A stretch of 61,200 nucleotides of DNA, counting the filler, from Platydemus manokwari (Eukaryota), in NCBI GenBank assembly GCA_037951405.1. It is 5 parts of 5 records of this genome, joined end to end, with 100 filler letters (N's around TTAATTAATTAA, not from the genome) between each part and the next. Parts side by side here need not be neighbours in the genome. Positions count along the whole stretch, not along the records: positions 50,191 to 61,200 come from JBBMOY010982195.1; 4 more parts are not named here. The stretch is one strand, 5' to 3'. The notes under the pieces were generated by a model. It had not been told where the DNA came from and made no database searches. It saw only the letters and a program-made list of their open reading frames with translations. How positions within the stretch are numbered: position 1 is the first letter of the stretch; each line of letters opens with the position of its first letter. The position numbers and the translations under genes are program-made. Of the stretch, positions 50,191 to 61,200 are shown one piece after another.

Positions 50191-50894
50191 TAATGATTTG
50201 CTACAGCACACACACAAGTGTTTACATCTGGTGTCAAATTCCGGTTATTAAGTTATAGACCCAATAGAAACAACTAGATAAAATCTCGAAAGATGAAACC
50301 ATATTTGTTACGAATTACTGATGATAACAAGTGAATTACATTCAAGAAATACCAAATAAGAATTAGTGTAAATGGTAATATTAAAGATTAAATGTTTCGC
50401 CATTCAAATTAGAAGAGATCAAAGAAGGTAAGAATTATTTTTATAAATTCGTGAAACATAATTTATGTGCTCAGTTAACCGGATAGGTTTGAAATGCGAT
50501 ACGGTAGTGTACTGAACTTAAGTTATGATAATACAGTAAATAATTTTGAAAATAATTTTGAAAATTGAACTTATTTTATTAACGTTATAAATTTTTAGTG
50601 TATTTTTTTAAAAAGTTTGGTAAAGTTACAAACAAAACTTTTTAATAATTAAAACATATTTTTCATTTTGTTAGCTTGGACCTTAATAAGAATTCTGAGG
50701 ATTTTTACATGGGGATGATTATTTAAATAAAATTCCATTTTATATAGAAATATTCGTTTATGTGTGTTTTGTTAAAGAAAGAAACCAGATCGAATGTTTA
50801 AATAATATGAACACAACCTTAAGAAAATATATTTAATTTATCAAAACTCAGGTTTGCAATCAGGTTTATAAGTGATAATACATTTAGTTGTTTA

Positions 50895-51384
50895 GACTTA
50901 AGTTAAGAAAAAAGGTCCTTTGACCTACTTGCGTTATAATAAATTTTCGCCCATGTGATAATTTTATAATTTAATATCACATATAACTGCTGTGTTTGAT
51001 TTATTCGTATAATTCAGTTAATATCCCATTTTTTAAAATGTCTAATAATGACAAAACATAGCTTTAAAACTAAGTTCCCATCCTAATCACAACACTTCTA
51101 TATGATTATTTAAGTTTTTAAAATTAAATTTTTATAATTATAAACCGAGTTAGTTAATTACAGACATGTTTAGTAATATCATTGCTTATTTTTATAAAAT
51201 AATTGTAAAAATTAAGACTATCTATCGATTTGCTTCTAATGTTTAAAAAGAGGTCCTCGCTAATTTTCAATAAATAATTTTCAAAATGTTTTTAAAGAAT
51301 ATAATTAAATAAACTATATAGATTTTTGCAATGAACTCAACAAATTTAAAATTTTATTTTAGGATTCTATTTTTAACTTTAGCT
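50895..51384. mobile_element. Non-autonomous Merlin element (same family as 23047-23702)
   Basis: Colinear with 23047-23702 (shared cacaacacttctatatgattatt, attgcttatttttataaa, taattaaataaactatatagatttttgcaat). TIRs are gacttaagttaagaaaaaaggtcc and ggattctatttttaactttagct. No TSD was recognisable. Confidence 0.85.
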
Positions 51385-53059
51385 TAATTTTAATTTCAAA
51401 CCTTTAATAGAATTACGTAACTGTTATGGTTTATGATAAACTTAAATCAACACAAAATTAATATTTTTAATAATTTGATTACATGTAATTTTAAAAGTTC
51501 ATTAGGATATTTACAAAAAAACTAAAATTACTAATAACCAGTTCAAGCCTTAGCAAATTTTATTGATATGAATTTCAAATTTATGAGAATGACATTTCAG
51601 AAGCCAACCAAAATTATCATATTATTAAATTTGATAAAAACATGTTGAATAAACGAAACAGATTTGACAAAGGCAAAATATACAGATTATTTATCGTAAT
51701 AATATATACTTAAAATAATATACTTTTATTTTCTTCGAAATCTTTTGAAAACATTTCCTATATTTAAGACTTCGACAGGTGTGAGAGGTATTTATGATAT
51801 TAAACTTATTGAAAACTTGTTCTTACAGATGAATTCTTAGCTACAGAAATAAGAAATCTCCTCTAAAAAGACTCCATGATAAGTTATTTATATTAAAAGA
51901 GATAAAGGCAAATGCTCATTTACGAATCATACTCTAATCTGAAGTGAAAAGAAAGATTTTAAATTTCGACCAGAACATGGTACAAATTAGTATAATGGAC
52001 CTCACATTTATTTATAAATGATACTTTAACTTAAAGGATATCACGTGGAGAAATGATTTTATATTTCGACTAGAATTTGGTACAAATTGGAATCTCGAAA
52101 CTTAATTTACAAACCAAATTCCAGAGATTCAAAATCTCATATTCAATGAGTTTTATATAAAATATCAATCAACCATGATCATTTGATAAAATAATGTGTC
52201 GGAGATTTATGAAACTTTTAACTAAATTTGTTGCAACGGTGTGATCATTTGGTGGAGTACTATCTGATTTATGAAAAAATCTATTCTCATATATTTCAAT
52301 AAAATTACTGAGTTAATTGGTTTGTTCTTTATTGATAAGTTTCGGAGGGTTGAATTTAAATTCACATCAGCTATTTCCAACATCATAACAATAAATCGAA
52401 GGCACTCCAACATGTTTTGTTAATTTCATAATTAAATTAAAAAGCAAGTCGAGATCAGCACCCAAAAGATAAACGACAAAACAGAAGACAACAACAAAGG
52501 GTGGTAGTCAAAAAAATCATGTTAAAGTCACACAGAATAAAATAATCATGCTAAAAGAATGATAGATGGACGCGAAACGTAACTCCATTTATAATCTGAT
52601 CGTGTGTGTTCACTTGATGTCTCACGGATTCACTTTCATTTGATAGAATCCTTCACTTGTAGCTCTTTTAACAAAATTTCTTGTATCTCTCGTGCGATTG
52701 GCACATGCCGATGTATGCTTGCCCCAGTTGACTATTAAATTTTAAATATGGATTGATATATAAGAATCATGCGAGAGGCAGTCGACACGTGTACTTATAT
52801 AAGAATAATATGAAATGATTTTGCAAATGTCAGCCAATGTTATACACTGACATTCATTAAATGCTAGCGTGACTTTGGATGTTAGCTGAGTGCAGTGCAG
52901 ACGACTTATTGACAAAGTTAAACTGGTTAATTAAACAGAGTAAATTGAAGAAAATCAATAAAAATTTCAAGGTTGATTTGAAAACGTTATGTCTAAAAAT
53001 CTAAATAGTTTTACATAAATTATTTACGGAAAATTGAATATTTACTCGATGATTTATTG

Positions 53060-53770
53060 ATTTATTATCAAGGCAACAAAATAAATAAATTATTATTCCT
53101 TTTATTTTATAATATAAATAATATTATTAATAATAATAATAATATGAATAATAATAGTAATCAAATTCTTATAATAAATAAACAAACAACTAACATTAAA
53201 TAATAAACAATACAATAACAAAAACAAATAAACAATATTTGAAGACGATTTCAGATAAAACAAATACTAAAAAACAATAAATAAAAATATTATAATAAAC
53301 AATTCTATCATCACAACAACAATCCACAATTGATTAAATAAATAAACAAATTAAATAAACAATGATAAACAATTACTTATATAGTAAATAATAAACAATT
53401 GGACAATAATAAACAAAAATAGTAAACAATTGTCGATAAATAAACAAATATCTCAAATCGAAATTCCAACAAAAATAAACAAACAATAATAAACATGTAT
53501 TAATATTAATAAATAAACATTTCAAAAAGAATCGATAAACAATTATTAATATAATAAACAATGTTAATAATAAATATATATAATTAATATAAATAATAAC
53601 ATTGAAATCTCAATTGAATAAACAAAAAAATAACAAAAAAAATAATAAACAATTAAATTAAAGATTTTAATATAATAATAAATGTGATAAAAATAGCAAA
53701 GGATTACCAATAAAATAAATAATAAACAATTTAAGAGAAACAATAATAAAAAATCAATAAAAAACAAACA
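53060..53770. repeat. Low-complexity AATAAAC-rich tract in a Rab3GAP1 intron
   Basis: About 19 TAAACA hexamers by manual count. The + strand is A-rich and nearly free of G. Confidence 0.85.
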
Positions 53771-53776
53771 AATTAC

Positions 53777-54720
53777 CAATTTCTCCTGGAAAACTCGTCG
53801 AATACCAGACAAGTTTAGACATTGCTTGGGTGTATATTTGATTGTTGCACAATGCAATTTGCTTTTGAAATCATTTTCAAATTGAATCCCAATATAGAGC
53901 GGCCAATTTTTCGGGCCATATTTCACGAGAATGGGTAAATAGCTGAATGACAAACATGATCAATAGAAATAACAAATAAATAACACAATTTATTATTCAC
54001 CATTTTACATTGATAGCTGCCATTGTGAGCGAACTGATCAATTGATTGATTTGATCTTGACCATAAATTGATGTGCTTTTCGATGGAGAAAAAACAATAA
54101 ATTTCCTTCTTCCAAACCTGAACAATGATTGTGATCAGAACATATTGCTAATCACAAATGAACCATTTAACAAGCTCCCAATGAATATCGTTCTCACAGA
54201 CGTTTCCAATCAACCTGTTTTCATTCATTACTAATGATTCGGCAACTGAAATTGAGAAAATGTGGTTTAAAAACTTCTCCCATTCAAATAAGAATATTGA
54301 TATAAAATTAATGTAAATCTTATAAGTACTTTCGATGGTATTCGATTCAGTATTGGAGTTTTCAGGATTATCAATTTTTGTAATATTTGGTTGAAATAAT
54401 GTTATATTTAATTCAAATTTTTGGAAAATAATTTTCCCCATATCTTTTTGATTATCATTCTAATAATTGTAGCTTACTAATTCCTATAAAACATTTACGA
54501 ATTTACTTCAATCATTTGCAAATTTTCTATGGACGTTATTATATCTTCAACTCTTGATATGAATCTAACAAAAATAGAAAAAGTTACGAAAAATTGTAAT
54601 TATTAAATAAACTTTTCCCATTCGGTAACATTTGTATAATCGGTAATTTCAAAAAGTTCAGATTCCTTTAAAAATTGCTATCAAATAATTTATTAATTAA
54701 CATCTTACTTCAATTTCCAT
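53777..54720 (-). CDS. RAB3GAP1: Rab3 GTPase-activating protein catalytic subunit, 5' part. Exons 54720-54709, 54665-54613, 54564-54507, 54459-54330, 54245-54164, 54117-54001, 53942-53777
   Basis: Spliced product MEIEESELFEITDYTNVTEWEKFISRVEDII...ELVKWFGRRKFIVFSP...QINQLISSLTMAAINVKCYLPILVK...KYTPKQCLNLSGIRRVFQEKL matches Rab3GAP1 motifs (FEITDFTTASEWERFISKVEE; LVRWYGLREFVVIAP; LLSS.SIA..N.GC.VP; HLSGLLDIFKSK). All introns are GT-AG and phase-consistent. Downstream exons were not identified. Confidence 0.9.
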
Positions 54721-56428
54721 TAAATAAACTTCTTATTAAGTTAAAATTAAAATCCTAATATTGATTAAATTGCCACCTCAAATTAAATTATTTAAACACG
54801 GGTAAAGGCTACTGACAAATTATTATTCTGATGTTTTAATTTTTTTAAACAATCCGATATTTATATGATTTTTTAATAAAAAAATTCTTAATTACTGCGA
54901 ATAGAAAAAATGATTCTATAAATAATCCGTTACAGCAATCAGATATTCCCCTGATGCGAATTGTTGATCAACAAAATATTCAAATATTTATTTTAATTGG
55001 CTTAATTTAGTTTGATTTTGACAAACACTAATATTTTATAGGTATTATTATGATTCAATGTTAATCATGTATAAGGAAAATGTATAATTATTATAATGTA
55101 GAATAATGCGATTTTATTAAAGGACAGAAAGTGATTAATGAATTGAAGAGAAATTTTCACCAACAATAAACGTGCAGAATTTTAAATGTAATTATAATGT
55201 AAATTTTCGTAAATTTTTCGTCTTCACACGATTGAGGAGAAGAAAGAACAAAACATAAGATTAATCGCTACATGTATGTCATTAGAACTCGTGAGACTCA
55301 TATAATTTGTGGATAATATTGAGAAAAAGATAGAAAAATCAATTAAATAGACATTCAAGTAAATTTCGGTTAAAAAAGACACAAAAAGTAACAGATTTAT
55401 GGGTACCAAATCCTAACAGAAGTATACCGGAATAGATTAAATGTTGGATCACAATATGCAAGATAAATGGTCAATACAAAATTAATGCGCAAAGTTTATT
55501 TTACAGTCTATTAAGAGGGGTACTTATTACTATTGTCTTAAGGATTTTTCACACACATCCTAGAATCCATGTAGTTTGATTTCTAATTTGTAAAGCTATA
55601 TTTTATTATGTTATTATTTGTCCTTATTTATATTCTAAGTTTAACTATGTATTATAGTTCCAACAGTAACCAACCTCATTAAAGAATAAGTTGTAGAAAT
55701 AGGAGACATCAAAACATTGCTAGAAGTTCATTTAGAATAATTGTTATTCAGTAACAATATTAATTTCTAATTTTTGTGTGATATTTTGCTTGAAATCTCC
55801 TTGTGTTTTTCTATTTATTAACTTAAAGTTTCTAAAGCTTTTTTATAGTTAAAATTACTTATTACTACGTAAAGCCTTTCTAATAAGTCAGATCTTAGTA
55901 AATTTCTTACAAATCAGTGGAATATTTAAACATTAATCCTGCTATTCCAAGAGTGTGCTGTACTGTCGACTGTTCTGGCCTTCAAACAATTAATGAATAC
56001 TGACGAGTTTTTATTAATTTTCTACATTAATAATTCCTTTTATCTATATCTATATTTAATGTAATATAGCTACTTACTCGTATTTACCACTAACAAAAAT
56101 CTTTTCAACTATTTTCTTACACTGATGTTTGTATCATTTACTTTATTTTTTGGAAAAGAATTTTCTAATGACAAAACAAATTTGAAATAAAGTTATTACT
56201 TTAATAATCTTTCTAAATAAATTCCGATAAAGAAACACATAAGGAACCGAATGTTTGTAAATACTCATAAATCATCATATATATCTTATTGTTAAGAGAA
56301 TTAATAAACTTATGATAAGAAAGATTATGGAAAGTGATTTGAAAGCTTGAATATGAATATCTTTAATAAATCAATTAATCGAACAATAATTAATCGAAGG
56401 ACCTAGAAACCAGAACTATTATTTCATA

Positions 56429-57961
56429 ATGGTTAGAATTTTGCTAAACTTTTGTTAAATAAATTTTGTTAAATAGGGAGGCGGTCTTCAAGAAGTAATC
56501 GTTATCCATATTGGTCAAGCAGGTTGTCAAGTTGGTAATGCTTGTTGGGAATTGTTTTGCATTGAGCACGGTATTGGACCAGATGGATTAGCGAGATATT
56601 CTTCAATGTCAGACACTTCCTTCAAAACGTTTTTTAATGAAACCGGAGCCGGAAAATTTGTTCCCCGTTGTGCATTTATTGATTTAGAACCTACACCAAT
56701 AGGTAAAGATTTGTAAAATTGTATAAAATTATTAAGAAATTAATTACATTTAATATTGATGACAAACTCATGTTTATAATTTGTATAAAATAATAATAAA
56801 ATTATAATAAAATAATATATTATAATGATTATATTAAAAAATTCCAAACTTTTAGATGAAATCCGTACTGGAGTATATCGTCTTTTGTTTCATCCAGAAC
56901 AATTAATGTCGGGAAAAGAAGATGCAGCTAATAATTATGCTCGGGGATATTTTACAATTGGGCAAATGATGATTGACCTATGTTTAGATCGTGTGAGGAA
57001 ACTGGCCGATGAGTGTCGAATGCTTCAAGGATTTTTTATTTTCCATTCCTTTGGTGGTGGTACAGGATCTGGATTTACGGCTTTAATGATTCAAAGAATA
57101 AGCCAGGATTATGGAAAAAAACCGAAAATTGAATTATGTGTATATCCAGCCCCTTGTTTGTCGACAGCAGTAGTAGAACCATACAATTCAATATTAACTA
57201 CTCATGCTTGCATTGAAGATTCCGATGTCACTTTTCTCATGGATAATGAGGCTGTGTGGGATATATGCATCCGAAATTTAAATATTCAAAGACCATCATA
57301 TACAAATATTAATAGAATTCTAGCTCAGATTATCAGTGCTATAACTGCTTCTCTGAGATTTGAAGGATCTCTCACTGGTGATTTGATATCATTACAAACT
57401 AATCTTGTTCCTTATCCAAGAATCCATTTTCCATTAATAACATTTAATCCCATAATATCAGCAGAAAAAGCATATCATGAAACGCTATCTACAGAACAAA
57501 TTACTCGATCATGTTTCGAACCAGCGAATAGTTTTGTCAAAGTTGACCCACGAAGAGGTAAATACATGACAGTATGTATGCTTTATAGAGGGGACGTTGA
57601 TCCTAACGCATCAAATACAGCAATTTCAAATATTAAGAGAACTCGAACAATTCAATGGGTTGATTGGTGTCCCACAGGTTTTAAAGTTGATATAAATCAC
57701 CAACCACCTGCTGCAGTACCAGGAGGTGATTTGGCAAAAGTCATGAGATCTTGTTGTATGCTTGCAAACACTACAGCAATAAGAGAAGCTTGGGCTAGAC
57801 TGGATAGAAAATTTGATTTAATGTTCTCAAAAAGAGCTTTTGTTCATTGGTATGTTGGTGAAGGAATGGAAGAAAATCAATTTATTGAAGCTAGAGAAGA
57901 TTTGGCTAGTTTAGAAAAAGATTACGAAGAAGTTGGTTTCGATTCTAAAATGAAAGGCTGA
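56429..57961 (+). CDS. TUBA: Highly divergent alpha-tubulin, 444 aa; exons 56429-56431, 56477-56702, 56856-57961
   Basis: ATG|gttaga...aatag|GGA GGC GGT CTT CAA GAA gives [33 protein letters not shown]. It has GGGTGSG, alpha-type [11 protein letters not shown] and [12 protein letters not shown]. It has the same two intron positions as the other alpha-tubulin, no stops or frameshifts, and AATAAA at ~58061. Confidence 0.96.
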
Positions 57962-60199
57962 GAAAAATTAAACTTCCTACAGAGAATAAGTTATCATCTT
58001 TTATTTTCAATTCTTTTACCAAATCAGATTGTATCATGAACACATTTATTTGGTCCAAAAAATAAATTGAACAAGAACAATAATGTTTTTACTTCTTCTA
58101 AAACAAATATTAATAACAATAGTAATAATGTGCAATTATAACTATAAAACGATGAACAATATTATATATAATCGGTTAATAGTAATTACTAATAACTTGT
58201 GAACTTATAATAATCTAAGTTTTGAATATCGAAAGAGCACTTGCAGTAAATATCCAACTAATGATAGTCTTTGTATCTCCATTCGGCGTCCAAGTGAACA
58301 TTCTTAGCAGAAATCAAAATTAGTTATTTCTGCCTCAATTATTATAAAATTATTATGTCCTTTCAATTACACACGCTATATATATTGTCGGGTACTTAAC
58401 ATAAATTTTCATAATATTTATAATTTCATTTCTCGACAAAAATAAATTTAATTCAAAAATAGAATAAAAGAAATATATAAATAGAAAGAAGGAACACTAG
58501 TAACTAAAAATCGTAATCATCAAAAATATATCAATAAAAATAGTATAAAATAAAACTGCAAATGATAATGTAAAATATATAGTGAAAGTAAAACTGGTAT
58601 AAATTAAAAACAACAATCTAAAAATCCCCCGAAAAACAAAAATCAAATTATCGCTCAATAATTATTTAAGTCAAACGAAGACAGATAATTAGCGAAATCT
58701 TTTATCAACGGAATAACTAATCAATCTTCAAAGAAACAATTATCTTTATCGAACGAGTTGAATATGTATATGTTGGGCAGGTAATGTTTGGTTTTACATG
58801 ATTTAAGACTTGATGTGACTAGAAATAAGAAAAGTTTAGAATCAGATGATAATTAAATATTAAAACCTTAAGAGCCGTTGAGCTCTGTTAATTAAAATTT
58901 GTAAAATTTAGCTGGCACACCTGACTCAAAAAGGTGTATATAATTATGAACAATATAGAATCACTTTATAGAATAATAATAGAATAAATAAATCGAACCA
59001 AATAAATTATAATTAAAATGACAATAACTAGGTTAATAATAATAGGTTAATATCGTTCAAATAAAAATATAATGAAATCGTATGATAAAATAATATTATT
59101 ACAATGAAATAGACGAGGGCCTAAGCAAAAAAACAGGTGTGCAATAGTTTTAGGTTTTCAGTTATTGATAGGTTCTATTATGATAAAACTAAAGATTTTT
59201 GTTGACTTCTTGTGGCAATGTCCGTAAGAGCCCTCAAATGATTTTATCGGTAGTTAGGTCTAATGACACAGTAACCACTACTATAGAATTGTTTTGATTT
59301 TATGATTTTAGATTTTTAATTTAGGTTCTAGGTGAATGAGATTCAGACTAGAACTTTCATATTTAAATAAAGATAAAATGTGATTTCAAAATAATTAAAA
59401 TTACTTAATCGGAGATTTTAAAATAATATCCAATTTTATAATAATATGCAATGGTTCTTTTATCGTATGTATTTTTCGAAAGATAATAAGACAAAATAGT
59501 TTTTCGGAGTTGATTAAGAAGATTTTTCAACATTATTCTTCGTAATTTGAGGTGACATAATAGTTTGTCGGATCCGTAGAAATGAATTAGATTGTTTATC
59601 ACAATTAATTAAATGATTTGTAGAAACTATAACGTAGTAATAGGCGACTTATTTTGTTCTTTGTCCTTAAACACTTGCTTCGAATTTTTCGTTTAATTTT
59701 TTACTATTTTATTTTTACTCATTAATTTTTCTGGATGCTATTTTTAGTCAATATTTTATTTAAATTCTAAATTTGAATTTCTTTTATTCTATATATTACG
59801 TTCGAGCCTTATTGATTTTATTGTTTAACTAAGCTTAATCCTATTTGATACCACTACTGTCAGTCAGTCTCTATGAGTTCTTAATTAAGGTTACTGGTGT
59901 AATATACCATATATTGATATTTCTTTACCTCGCACAGCCTTATTGTGTGAAGACAATAGGTGTGGCAGTAGTGATATATTTTAATTAACTTAATTATCAA
60001 TCTTAAAATTATCTAAGCCTACTATTTTTTTAAATTGATTACAAACAATTATTTTACTATCCTTATATGATTAATAACTAAGATTTGACGCTATAAATGT
60101 TTATTAAATATAACACCAATACAAAACTGATTAACAACAATAATAAAATAAAAGTTACAGATTGATTTTGAAACTACCCTATACACTTAATAAAAAAAA

Positions 60200-60630
60200 A
60201 GGTACAAGACTACCTTACAATTTCAGAGAAAAAGACGGTTAATACATCCGACTCTAGGGGTAAAACCAGGTTACCTTTCTTCAGAGTGTTTTGTGAACAA
60301 GGCTCTATAATAAGAAATATAACGATACGAAATATAATATAAATCAGTATTTTACAGGTATGGGTCTTAATTTGGGTCTTCCAGTAAAATACCGGGCATA
60401 TATGGGAATATTTGTCTTATGCACCAGATGATCTTCTACTGTGCTTCGAATTGAAATTTAAATGTGTCTTCTTCAATTGATGTAACGTACAACGTCGTCT
60501 TAGCAAATAGGAAATTGTGGACAGTGAAATTAAAATAATGGCCGTGTTGATTGCCTTATATAGACAGTGTGAATCACTCGCAGATATTCTCTGCGATTAA
60601 ATCTAATGCCAGGGAATTTTATTTTATCGA
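60200..60630 (-). mobile_element. Decayed L1/Tx1-like reverse transcriptase remnant
   Basis: Minus-strand fragments KFPGI/DLIAE (domain 0), YFTGRPKLRPIPVK, LIIEP and SDVLTVF (YADD-like) occur in RT order. It is related to 35996-36030. Confidence 0.45.
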
Positions 60631-61200
60631 TAGAATTTATTCAATAGTGAGAGAAATCCTCTCTGAATAAATTTTTTAGTCAGACAAAATATCTCTAGAT
60701 TAAATTTAATGGAGTGACTATTTTATTCTGTGACAGAATTTTCATGCACGAAAATAGATGACAATTTATTTGTCGCTGTTAATGGGTGATATCTTATTGC
60801 GTATTGATATTTTATAAATTAATTTATTATTTTAGGGAATTTCGACGGGTTTATTATTGGTAGTTTTATTGATATTATTATTTTACGGATATATAAATAA
60901 TAAATATTATAAATATCAATATTCTTAACTGGTCTTTCCTCGGAAATTTCAAAGTGTCAAAATATAAAAAAACACATTGTGTTGGGTTGTGGTAAGATGT
61001 TATGTTTTGTTGTTTGTTATATTACAACTCAACAGCGTGAGTTCGTTACTATTTTACGAATTTGTTTCAACAAGAATAATATCAACAAAGAGAAATTTTA
61101 TTATCAAAAATTTATTTGAAATCACAACGTACAAACACTCAAGTTAACTCAATCGAGATTTTACAAGAAAAACAAATTAACTATGGTAATCTCACCGAGA

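What the first reader, a model, noticed from the sequence alone, without database searches (positions are those of the whole stretch)
57900..57961. Same tubulin has no acidic C-terminal tail and ends in a basic stub ([13 protein letters not shown])
Seen: the stop comes right after H12, so there is no E-rich tail and no terminal EEY/F. The H11-H12 segment EEGEFSE is changed to EENQFIE. Established: the tail carries polyglutamylation, glycylation and tyrosination sites and recruits CAP-Gly proteins, kinesin-13 and severing enzymes, while E415/G416/E417 lie on the motor-binding surface. Inference: lattices with this subunit would escape the tubulin code, severing and depolymerases, which fits a hyperstable role.
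Basis: partly seen in the sequence, partly recalled or inferred. Interest (0 to 1): 0.7.

Follow-up and report, generated by a model that had tools for sequence, protein, structure and literature searches.

The report
Tail-less flatworm-type alpha-tubulin gene
This is an intact, strongly conserved alpha-tubulin gene that really does end without the usual acidic tail; the same end is found in parasitic flatworms and was noted in liver fluke in 2008, and this copy has also lost the residue that triggers GTP hydrolysis in microtubules.

Summary
A three-exon alpha-tubulin gene (ATG 56429-56431; exon 2 56477-56702; exon 3 56856-57961) ends ...[13 protein letters not shown], followed by TGA. It has no acidic tail and no terminal EEY/F, and EEGEFSE is changed to EENQFIE.

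It is not a nonsense allele and not a missed exon.
- One orthologue is 96% identical in protein and saturated at synonymous sites (dN/dS 0.014). It stops one codon earlier, at ...DSKMK followed by TAG, and shares the 3'UTR and its AATAAA.
- A careful tree puts the protein, with 100/100 support, in a clade of tail-less alpha-tubulins from trematodes and cestodes. All 15 proteins I read end 2-5 residues after the [DA][ST] pair (or its equivalent) that follows EEVG/EELG.
- The Fasciola hepatica gene has the same three-exon structure.
- Ryan et al. 2008 described a F. hepatica isotype with these features, cloned from adult cDNA.

So this is a new member of a known, little-studied kind, probably from a flatworm outside the cestodes and trematodes.

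The alpha-tail and K40 marks are impossible, but the beta partner is unknown and nothing shows stability directly.

A separate change is specific to this lineage. The catalytic Glu254 is Ser, within a remodelled T7-H8 segment, in both orthologues. That does predict a stabilising subunit that cannot trigger GTP hydrolysis. No RNA data exist for this organism.

The parts
56429..56431 (+). Exon 1 coding part: the initiator ATG alone, followed directly by a GT donor (atg|GTTAGA).
   Evidence: Sequence. An in-frame TAG lies immediately before exon 2, so an upstream ATG must be spliced on. The Fasciola hepatica orthologue has the same ATG|GT arrangement.
56432..56476 (+). Intron 1, 45 nt, GT..AG.
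   Evidence: The position is shared with F. hepatica locus L004, where the intron is about 5.4 kb.
56477..56702 (+). Exon 2: [16 protein letters not shown]...DLEPTPI plus the first base of the D76 codon. It carries an N-terminal extension and a shortened H1-S2 loop without K40 ([11 protein letters not shown], 56588-56620).
   Evidence: Pfam Tubulin, E 3.3e-17. Aligned with clade members and canonical chains.
56703..56855 (+). Intron 2, 153 nt, phase 1, inside the Asp76 codon.
   Evidence: F. hepatica L004 has the same position and phase.
56856..57961 (+). Exon 3: the rest of the GTPase domain, the intermediate and C-terminal domains, helix H12 and the stop codon.
   Evidence: Pfam Tubulin 1.7e-36 and Tubulin_C 1.3e-42. 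It is 72% identical to solved alpha-tubulins without gaps. dN/dS is 0.014 against L001.
57389..57391 (+). TCA codon: Ser at the position of the catalytic Glu254. It sits in the remodelled T7-H8 segment GDLISLQTN (N249T, T253I, E254S, F255L).
   Evidence: Gap-free alignment to 6tis. The orthologue L001 has the same TCA. All the other alpha-tubulins fetched in which the motif was found keep Glu at this position, including all trematode and cestode clade members.
57869..57889 (+). H11'-H12 segment EENQFIE (canonical EEGEFSE).
   Evidence: This segment varies within the clade: EEGQFIE, EENEFNV, EEETFVT.
57947..57961 (+). The basic stub K-M-K-G and the TGA stop, directly after D438-S439.
   Evidence: The orthologue ends K-M-K followed by TAG. 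Clade members end ATKQ, ATKT, ATKM, ATKV, DTKG, ATKEE, MSR or DTLV.
57962..58085 (+). 3'UTR with a conserved AATAAA at 58061-58066, 100 nt after the stop.
   Evidence: Alignment with L001. The window's CCAAAAAATAAATTGAA and L001's CCAACAAATAAATTGAA differ at one base. The far end of the UTR is inferred, not shown.

Best explanation
The stop at 57959-57961 is the true, ancient end of an intact alpha-tubulin isotype of about 444 residues. The gene belongs to a flatworm clade of divergent alpha-tubulins that lost the acidic C-terminal tail, the K40 acetylation loop and the MREC N-terminus before the window's lineage split from trematodes and cestodes. Since then the gene has been kept under strong purifying selection. 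Inferred mechanism: it pairs with a beta-tubulin and enters microtubules. There the alpha subunit offers no tail for TTL/vasohibin, glutamylases or glycylases, no EEY/F for CAP-Gly proteins and no K40 for the acetyltransferase. It also carries about 14-16 fewer negative charges than a canonical chain. This marks a subset of microtubules that cannot be written on through alpha and are predicted to assemble or bundle more easily. In the window's lineage alone, the catalytic Glu254 is replaced by Ser. Wherever this subunit sits on top of a beta subunit, GTP hydrolysis is predicted to be blocked or much slowed. The subunit would then act as a built-in lattice stabiliser. Shown: the gene structure, the end, its conservation, the clade membership and the residue changes. 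Inferred: polymerisation, the partner, the stability and the cell type.
For: Gene and domains.
The end aligns gap-free to solved alpha-tubulins through S439.
Orthologue P0003/L001 is 96% identical in protein and 82% in DNA, with dS about 2, dN 0.029 and dN/dS 0.014. It stops one codon earlier with a different stop codon.
The 3'UTR can be aligned with the orthologue's, and its AATAAA is conserved.
No window of 8 residues with 5 or more D/E occurs in any + frame between 57900 and 61200.
The clade has 100/100 support in the careful ML tree. Window plus P0003 are sister to cestodes plus trematodes, whose branching follows the species tree.
The window differs from 8 canonical chains at 86 positions invariant in all of them; about 46 of these are changed across the whole clade.
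All 15 clade proteins lack the tail.
The intron positions and phases are identical in F. hepatica.
Ryan et al. 2008 cloned a F. hepatica isotype, alpha-tub5, from adult cDNA. It has no Glu-Tyr end, no E445, Asn at position 40 and an N-terminal extension.
Net charge is -8, against -22 to -24 for canonical chains.
E254A blocks GTP hydrolysis, gives stable microtubules and is lethal in yeast (PMC7018511; also PMC8764682).
Against: No RNA run holds this locus, so transcription, the 3' end and the 45-nt first intron are not shown directly for this organism.
Only one close orthologue exists. It is a 1281-base contig without exon 2 or anything downstream of the UTR.
I could not show that P0098 is the same protein as Ryan's alpha-tub5. 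Its N-terminal extension looks shorter than the five residues they report.
Stability, partner and site of use rest on inference from mutants of other species. Ser254 with the neighbouring changes might keep some activity.
Tail-less orthologues that keep E254 show that the two traits are independent.
Confidence: 0.85

Rival explanations
1. The annotated end is incomplete. Transcripts use the GT at 57932, or another donor, and splice to a downstream exon that adds a normal acidic tail.
For: A GT exists at 57932 in phase 0. No RNA data are available to exclude the splice directly.
Against: The donor is weak (GTTGGT) and reads GTCGGA in the orthologue. The codons after it (FDSKMK) are conserved in an orthologue with saturated synonymous sites, and the stop lies within one codon. 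The 3'UTR and its AATAAA are conserved right behind the stop. No acidic reading frame exists in 3.2 kb downstream. Fifteen clade proteins from independent annotations end in the same place, and Ryan's separately cloned F. hepatica cDNA isotype likewise lacks the Glu-Tyr end.
Confidence: 0.04
2. It is a decaying gene or a recent nonsense allele of a normal alpha-tubulin.
For: The protein is only about 72% identical to canonical alpha-tubulins. It has lost the tail, K40 and the catalytic Glu254.
Against: dN/dS is 0.014 over 365 codons, with dS about 2. The frames are intact, the splice sites are intact and conserved, and GGGTGSG is present. The same end is found across trematodes and cestodes. 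DNA contigs of run X1 show no variant at the stop.
Confidence: 0.01
3. The protein is real and tail-less but does not build bulk lattice. It acts at low dose as a cap or seed-like subunit, or as a non-polymerising partner that ties up beta-tubulin or chaperones.
For: In this lineage E254S together with N249T, T253I and F255L alters the face that contacts the next dimer. A paper on mosaic microtubules of wild-type and hydrolysis-deficient tubulin turned up in the search (PMC11893814; title and abstract only). The same genome holds canonical alpha-tubulin paralogues with [10 protein letters not shown].
Against: Longitudinal and lateral contact regions are otherwise well conserved, at 72% identity without gaps. 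The trematode and cestode orthologues keep a normal T7-H8 segment. Nothing here measures dose or localisation.
Confidence: 0.1

Closest known systems
Fasciola hepatica alpha-tubulin isotype 5 (Ryan et al. 2008, PMC3820024) and its annotated trematode and cestode relatives (P0098, P0106, P0143, P0149, P0077, P0147, P0151 and others)
   Same: They form one clade with the window protein (100/100 support). They share the three-exon structure, the N-terminal extension, the short H1-S2 loop without K40, dozens of derived residues and a C-terminus that stops 2-5 residues after the [DA][ST] pair (or its equivalent) that follows EEVG/EELG, with no acidic tail.
   Different: The trematode and cestode members keep the catalytic E254 and N249. 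The window protein and P0003 have E254S, N249T, T253I and F255L, and R2Q. Identity to these relatives is only about 68-74%. I did not show that P0098 is identical to the published isotype 5.
Engineered hydrolysis-dead human alpha-tubulin E254A/E254N (and the slowed E254D) (Roostalu 2020, PMC7018511; LaFrance 2022, PMC8764682)
   Same: The catalytic glutamate of the T7-H8 segment is replaced. E254A blocks hydrolysis and gives stable GTP-bound lattices and strong nucleation, and E254D slows hydrolysis.
   Different: Those are laboratory point mutants of canonical, tailed tubulin, and the equivalent mutant is lethal in yeast. Here the change is natural, Ser rather than Ala/Asn/Asp, accompanied by neighbouring changes, and kept under purifying selection. 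Its activity is untested.
Caenorhabditis elegans TBA-6 (PMC8987236)
   Same: It is an alpha-tubulin isotype whose C-terminal tail appears to have no residues for polyglutamylation and which serves a specialised microtubule set, the cilia of male neurons.
   Different: It is of independent origin and keeps a long tail of unusual composition rather than a four-residue stub. It is not in the flatworm clade.
[quoted passage not shown]
   Same: They are divergent isotypes with altered tails and contact surfaces, used for restricted, non-axonemal microtubule arrays.
   Different: These are protist lineages of independent origin. Their tails are altered rather than reduced to a short basic stub.
Subtilisin-cleaved tubulin (tubulin S); from my own knowledge, not checked here
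   Same: It is tubulin without acidic tails. It is reported to assemble at a lower critical concentration and to resist tail-dependent factors.
   Different: It is a proteolytic product lacking both the alpha and the beta tail, not a gene-encoded isotype.

Membership tests
Alpha-tubulin (tubulin/FtsZ superfamily) | Tubulin GTPase domain and tubulin C-terminal domain. | tested here: met
   PF00091 at 1.7e-36 (exon 3) and 3.3e-17 (exon 2). PF03953 at 1.3e-42.
Alpha-tubulin (tubulin/FtsZ superfamily) | Closest to alpha- rather than beta- or gamma-tubulin, with the GGGTGSG signature. | tested here: met
   The best solved matches are all alpha chains, about 72% identical and gap-free over residues 76-439. 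FGGGTGSG is present.
Alpha-tubulin (tubulin/FtsZ superfamily) | Catalytic Glu254 in the T7-H8 segment, which activates hydrolysis of GTP on the neighbouring beta subunit. | tested here: not met
   Ser is found at this position (TCA, 57389-57391) in the window and in L001. All the other alpha-tubulins fetched in which the motif was found have Glu at this position.
Canonical alpha-tubulin as substrate of the tubulin code | Acidic C-terminal tail with glutamylation sites (E445) and a terminal EEY/EEF. | tested here: not met
   The protein ends DSKMKG. Counted from the residue after EEVG, the stub (FDSKMKG) has charge +1 and the canonical segments -6 to -8.
Canonical alpha-tubulin as substrate of the tubulin code | Lys40 in the H1-S2 loop. 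| tested here: not met
   The loop is about three residues shorter ([11 protein letters not shown]) and has no Lys at or near position 40.
Flatworm tail-less alpha-tubulin clade (F. hepatica alpha-tub5-like) | Forms one clade with the trematode and cestode members, apart from canonical alpha-tubulins, including the canonical flatworm ones. | tested here: met
   Careful IQ-TREE run (LG+C20+F+G4): support 100/100, stem length 0.45. The bootstrap had not fully settled. The quick tree agrees.
Flatworm tail-less alpha-tubulin clade (F. hepatica alpha-tub5-like) | Shared derived residues and a C-terminus that stops 2-5 residues after the [DA][ST] pair (or its equivalent) that follows EEVG/EELG. | tested here: met
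   About 46 positions that are invariant in canonical chains are changed across the whole clade, for example G131M, T194C, M203L, V204M, V250G, V324D, G354D and V375C. The ends are listed.
Flatworm tail-less alpha-tubulin clade (F. hepatica alpha-tub5-like) | The same exon-intron structure. | tested here: met
   Both the window and F. hepatica L004 have an intron directly after ATG and a phase-1 intron in the D76 codon. Both positions are, to my knowledge, also ancestral to animal alpha-tubulin genes, so this supports the gene model more than it supports the clade.
Flatworm tail-less alpha-tubulin clade (F. hepatica alpha-tub5-like) | The source organism is a flatworm. | tested here: inconclusive
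   This is inferred only from the gene tree. The rest of the piece has no informative gene, and the run labels are coded.
Pseudogene | Relaxed selection, broken frames or broken splice sites. | tested here: not met
   dN/dS is 0.014. The frames are open and the sites are GT..AG.

The most novel reading that the evidence does not exclude
In a flatworm lineage outside the cestodes and trematodes, an already tail-less and K40-less alpha-tubulin has in addition lost the catalytic Glu254 (E254S, with N249T, T253I and F255L), and the gene has been kept under strong purifying selection. It would be a natural alpha-tubulin that cannot trigger GTP hydrolysis and cannot be marked: a genetically encoded microtubule stabiliser. 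It would build or dope non-dynamic arrays such as the cortical microtubules of sperm or epidermal and tegumental scaffolds. The equivalent point mutation is lethal in yeast and is otherwise known only from engineered tubulin.
Probability: 0.35. Interest if true: 0.75.

Novelty: new member of a known kind. Interest (0 to 1): 0.45.

Why it matters
The tail-less end is not new in itself. It was noted for one liver-fluke isotype in 2008 and is present, unremarked, in many annotated trematode and cestode genomes.

This analysis adds three things:
- The trait belongs to a single old clade that reaches beyond the cestodes and trematodes.
- It comes together with loss of K40, loss of the MREC N-terminus and about 14-16 fewer negative charges.
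- One lineage has gone further and replaced the catalytic glutamate.

If that subunit is hydrolysis-dead in vivo, it shows that animals can tune lattice stability through an isotype rather than through associated proteins or modifications. It would also provide a natural reagent for studying GTP-state lattices.

The clade is specific to flatworms and differs from host tubulins at many surface positions. That may be of interest for work on anthelmintic drug targets.

Tried and rejected
RNA evidence: the run search found no RNA run and only one DNA holder. Laying its contigs confirmed the sequence and revealed tubulin paralogues. The 'joints' listed there are short matches from those paralogues, not splicing.

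Searches for the run accession and for 'lacks the C-terminal tail' found no paper. A search for a planarian 'divergent alpha-tubulin' paper that I recalled from memory found only a Naegleria reference, so I do not cite the planarian paper. A search on modifications of flatworm sperm cortical microtubules gave nothing usable, so the sperm-cortex idea remains speculation.

Neighbouring genes that might name the organism: the piece holds no convincing open frame, tRNA or Rfam match outside the tubulin gene.

Linking P0098 to the published F. hepatica cDNA: the cluster members are genome annotations only.

Not run:
- The large representative search. Its clusters at 50% identity merge all alpha-tubulins and could not separate orthologues.
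- Structure prediction. The protein is 72% identical to many solved chains, so a model would add nothing.
The exons were searched by reference, and charges were summed exon by exon.

Full report
**1. What is in the sequence**

The piece 50191-61200 is very AT-rich (GC about 0.15-0.34). It holds one clear gene, on the + strand.

- The long open frame 56825-57961 contains the last exon of an alpha-tubulin. Upstream, a second coding block (56477-56702) encodes the N-terminal strand and helix H1.
- Pfam finds the Tubulin GTPase domain in both blocks and Tubulin_C in the last one.
- The splice sites fit a three-exon model:
  - ATG 56429-56431, followed at once by GT.
  - A 45-nt intron ending in TAG at 56474-56476.
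  - Exon 2, 56477-56702.
  - A 153-nt phase-1 intron inside the Asp76 codon.
  - Exon 3, 56856-57961.
- The product has about 444 residues.

**2.

- The last codons read [13 protein letters not shown], then TGA at 57959-57961.
- Against solved alpha-tubulins the alignment is gap-free and runs to D438-S439, the last ordered residues.
- Canonical chains continue with 11-13 residues, mostly Glu/Asp/Gly, ending in EY or EF. This protein adds only KMKG.
- Counted from the residue after EEVG, the stub (FDSKMKG) has charge +1 and the canonical segments -6 to -8. The whole protein has net charge -8, against -22 to -24.
- EEGEFSE is EENQFIE here, at 57869-57889.
- DNA contigs of run X1 match 56300-58300 without a single difference. 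X1 may be the source sample.

**3. It is neither a recent nonsense allele nor a missed exon**

The word search found one close relative, P0003. It lies on a 1281-base Logan contig (L001) from another run.

- It is 96% identical in protein but only 82% in DNA.
- Nei-Gojobori counts give dS about 2 (saturated), dN 0.029 and dN/dS 0.014 over 365 codons. The two copies are therefore long separated and under strong constraint.
- P0003 ends ...[12 protein letters not shown] and then TAG, one codon earlier and with a different stop codon.
- The DNA after the stop can still be aligned. An AATAAA in an almost identical context lies 100 nt downstream, at 58061-58066.
- Between 57900 and 61200 no + frame holds even one window of 8 residues with five acidic ones. 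Reading through the TGA would give a hydrophobic peptide.

**4. It belongs to a flatworm clade of tail-less alpha-tubulins**

Among about 170 alpha-tubulins fetched, the only others with short non-acidic ends come from trematodes and cestodes, plus one metagenome contig:
- Trematodes: Fasciola hepatica and F. gigantica, Fasciolopsis, Echinostoma, Clonorchis, Paragonimus, Heterobilharzia and Trichobilharzia.
- Cestodes: Schistocephalus, Dibothriocephalus, Echinococcus and Hymenolepis.
- Their ends are ATKQ, ATRQ, ATR, ATKT, ATKM, ATKV, DTKG, ATKEE, MSR and DTLV.

They share a long list of derived features with the window protein:
- An N-terminal extension before EV(V/I)CIH.
- A shorter H1-S2 loop without K40.
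- [49 protein letters not shown] and CCMLAN.
- The window differs from eight canonical chains at 86 positions that are invariant in all eight. About 46 of these are changed across the whole clade.

A careful maximum-likelihood tree of 31 rows gives the clade 100/100 support on a long stem (0.45). Window plus P0003 (100/99) are sister to cestodes plus trematodes (100/98), which separate as the species do. The quick tree agrees. The bootstrap had not fully settled, so the values are rough. Canonical alpha-tubulins of Clonorchis and Schistocephalus fall with those of other animals.

The F. hepatica genomic locus has the same structure: ATG|GT, the phase-1 intron in the Asp76 codon, and a last exon running to the stop.

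The tail was therefore lost once, before these lineages split. The source organism is most likely a flatworm outside the cestodes and trematodes, either free-living or a monogenean. I could not name it.

**5. What was already known**

- Ryan et al. 2008 cloned five alpha-tubulin isotypes from adult F. hepatica. Isotype 5 does not end in Glu-Tyr, lacks the E445 glutamylation site, has Asn at position 40 and has an N-terminal extension. Two beta isotypes lack most of the acidic tail (PMC3820024).
- That is cDNA evidence that isotypes of this type are expressed with this end. It also shows that tail-less beta partners exist in flatworms.
- I could not prove that P0098 is that isotype.
- Other isotypes with tails that cannot be modified, or with divergent tails, are known in C. 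elegans (TBA-6), Tetrahymena and Naegleria.
- The kind is therefore known. The window adds a new member from a lineage not sampled before.

**6. A change specific to this lineage that bears on 'hyperstable'**

- Ten positions are changed only in the window and P0003, while the trematode and cestode orthologues keep the canonical residue. Three of them cluster in the T7-H8 segment: N249T, E254S and F255L. T253I lies beside them, although position 253 also varies in the trematode and cestode members.
- Glu254 is the catalytic residue that activates hydrolysis of the GTP bound to the beta subunit of the next dimer.
- E254A blocks hydrolysis, gives microtubules that stay stable and nucleate strongly, and is lethal in yeast. 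E254D slows hydrolysis and nearly abolishes catastrophes (PMC7018511; PMC8764682).
- Both orthologues use TCA at 57389-57391. That is at least two base changes from any Glu codon.
- The same genome carries canonical paralogues with [10 protein letters not shown].
- I therefore infer that this subunit is a hydrolysis-deficient stabiliser. This is inference: Ser254 has not been tested.

**7.

- It is correct that this alpha subunit cannot carry alpha-tail marks or recruit readers of EEY/F. It cannot be acetylated at K40 either.
- It does not follow that the lattice escapes severing enzymes and depolymerases. The beta tail may be present, and the severing enzymes act, to my knowledge, mainly through it.
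- The tail-less trematode and cestode orthologues keep a normal catalytic loop, so lacking a tail and having a locked lattice are separate traits.
- The H11'-H12 changes vary within the clade. E414 and E415 are kept.

**8. Verdict**

- The feature is a genuine, ancient isotype trait already described in liver fluke, so it is a new member of a known kind.
- The most interesting point is the natural loss of the catalytic glutamate in this lineage, which deserves its own test.
- No RNA or protein data are available for this organism.

Noticed in passing
window 57380-57394 (codon 57389-57391): The catalytic Glu254 of alpha-tubulin is Ser, within GDLISLQTN (N249T, T253I, E254S, F255L). The orthologue L001 has the same, but no trematode or cestode clade member and no canonical alpha-tubulin fetched does. 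This predicts loss or slowing of lattice GTP hydrolysis.
   Followed up: partly
window 56588-56620: The H1-S2 loop is about three residues shorter ([11 protein letters not shown]) and has no Lys40, so the luminal acetylation site is missing. The whole flatworm clade shares this.
   Followed up: partly
window 56429-56500: The N-terminus reads [10 protein letters not shown] instead of MRECIS. To my knowledge the MREC/MREI motif is what TTC5 reads on nascent chains for tubulin mRNA autoregulation. This isotype, and the whole clade with its N-terminal extensions, may therefore escape that control. Not tested.
   Followed up: no
window 57962-58085 and L001 1176-1281: The 3'UTR is roughly 70% identical between two species whose synonymous sites are saturated (pS 0.70). 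This suggests constraint on the UTR itself, for example localisation or translational control.
   Followed up: partly
run X1, contigs laid on window 56888-57884: Many other contigs of the same DNA run match short conserved tubulin stretches, with summed word depth up to about 760 at 57841-57907. The genome therefore carries a large tubulin family. It includes a canonical alpha with [10 protein letters not shown] and another paralogue reading GEFNEARDEI.
   Followed up: partly
whole protein (exons 2 and 3): Net charge is -8, against -22 to -24 for canonical alpha-tubulins. The missing tail accounts for only about half of the difference, so the body of the protein has also lost acidic charge, as in the trematode and cestode orthologues (-8 to -13).
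   Followed up: partly
window 53000-53800: This is an extremely AT-rich block (GC 0.13-0.15, AT skew about 0.38) made of several short imperfect tandem repeats rich in A (periods 3, 13, 18, 24, 25 and 31). No function is apparent.
   Followed up: no
window 50191-56400 and 58100-61200: No convincing protein-coding frame, tRNA or Rfam match was found in about 9 kb around the gene. The tubulin gene sits alone in AT-rich DNA.
   Followed up: partly
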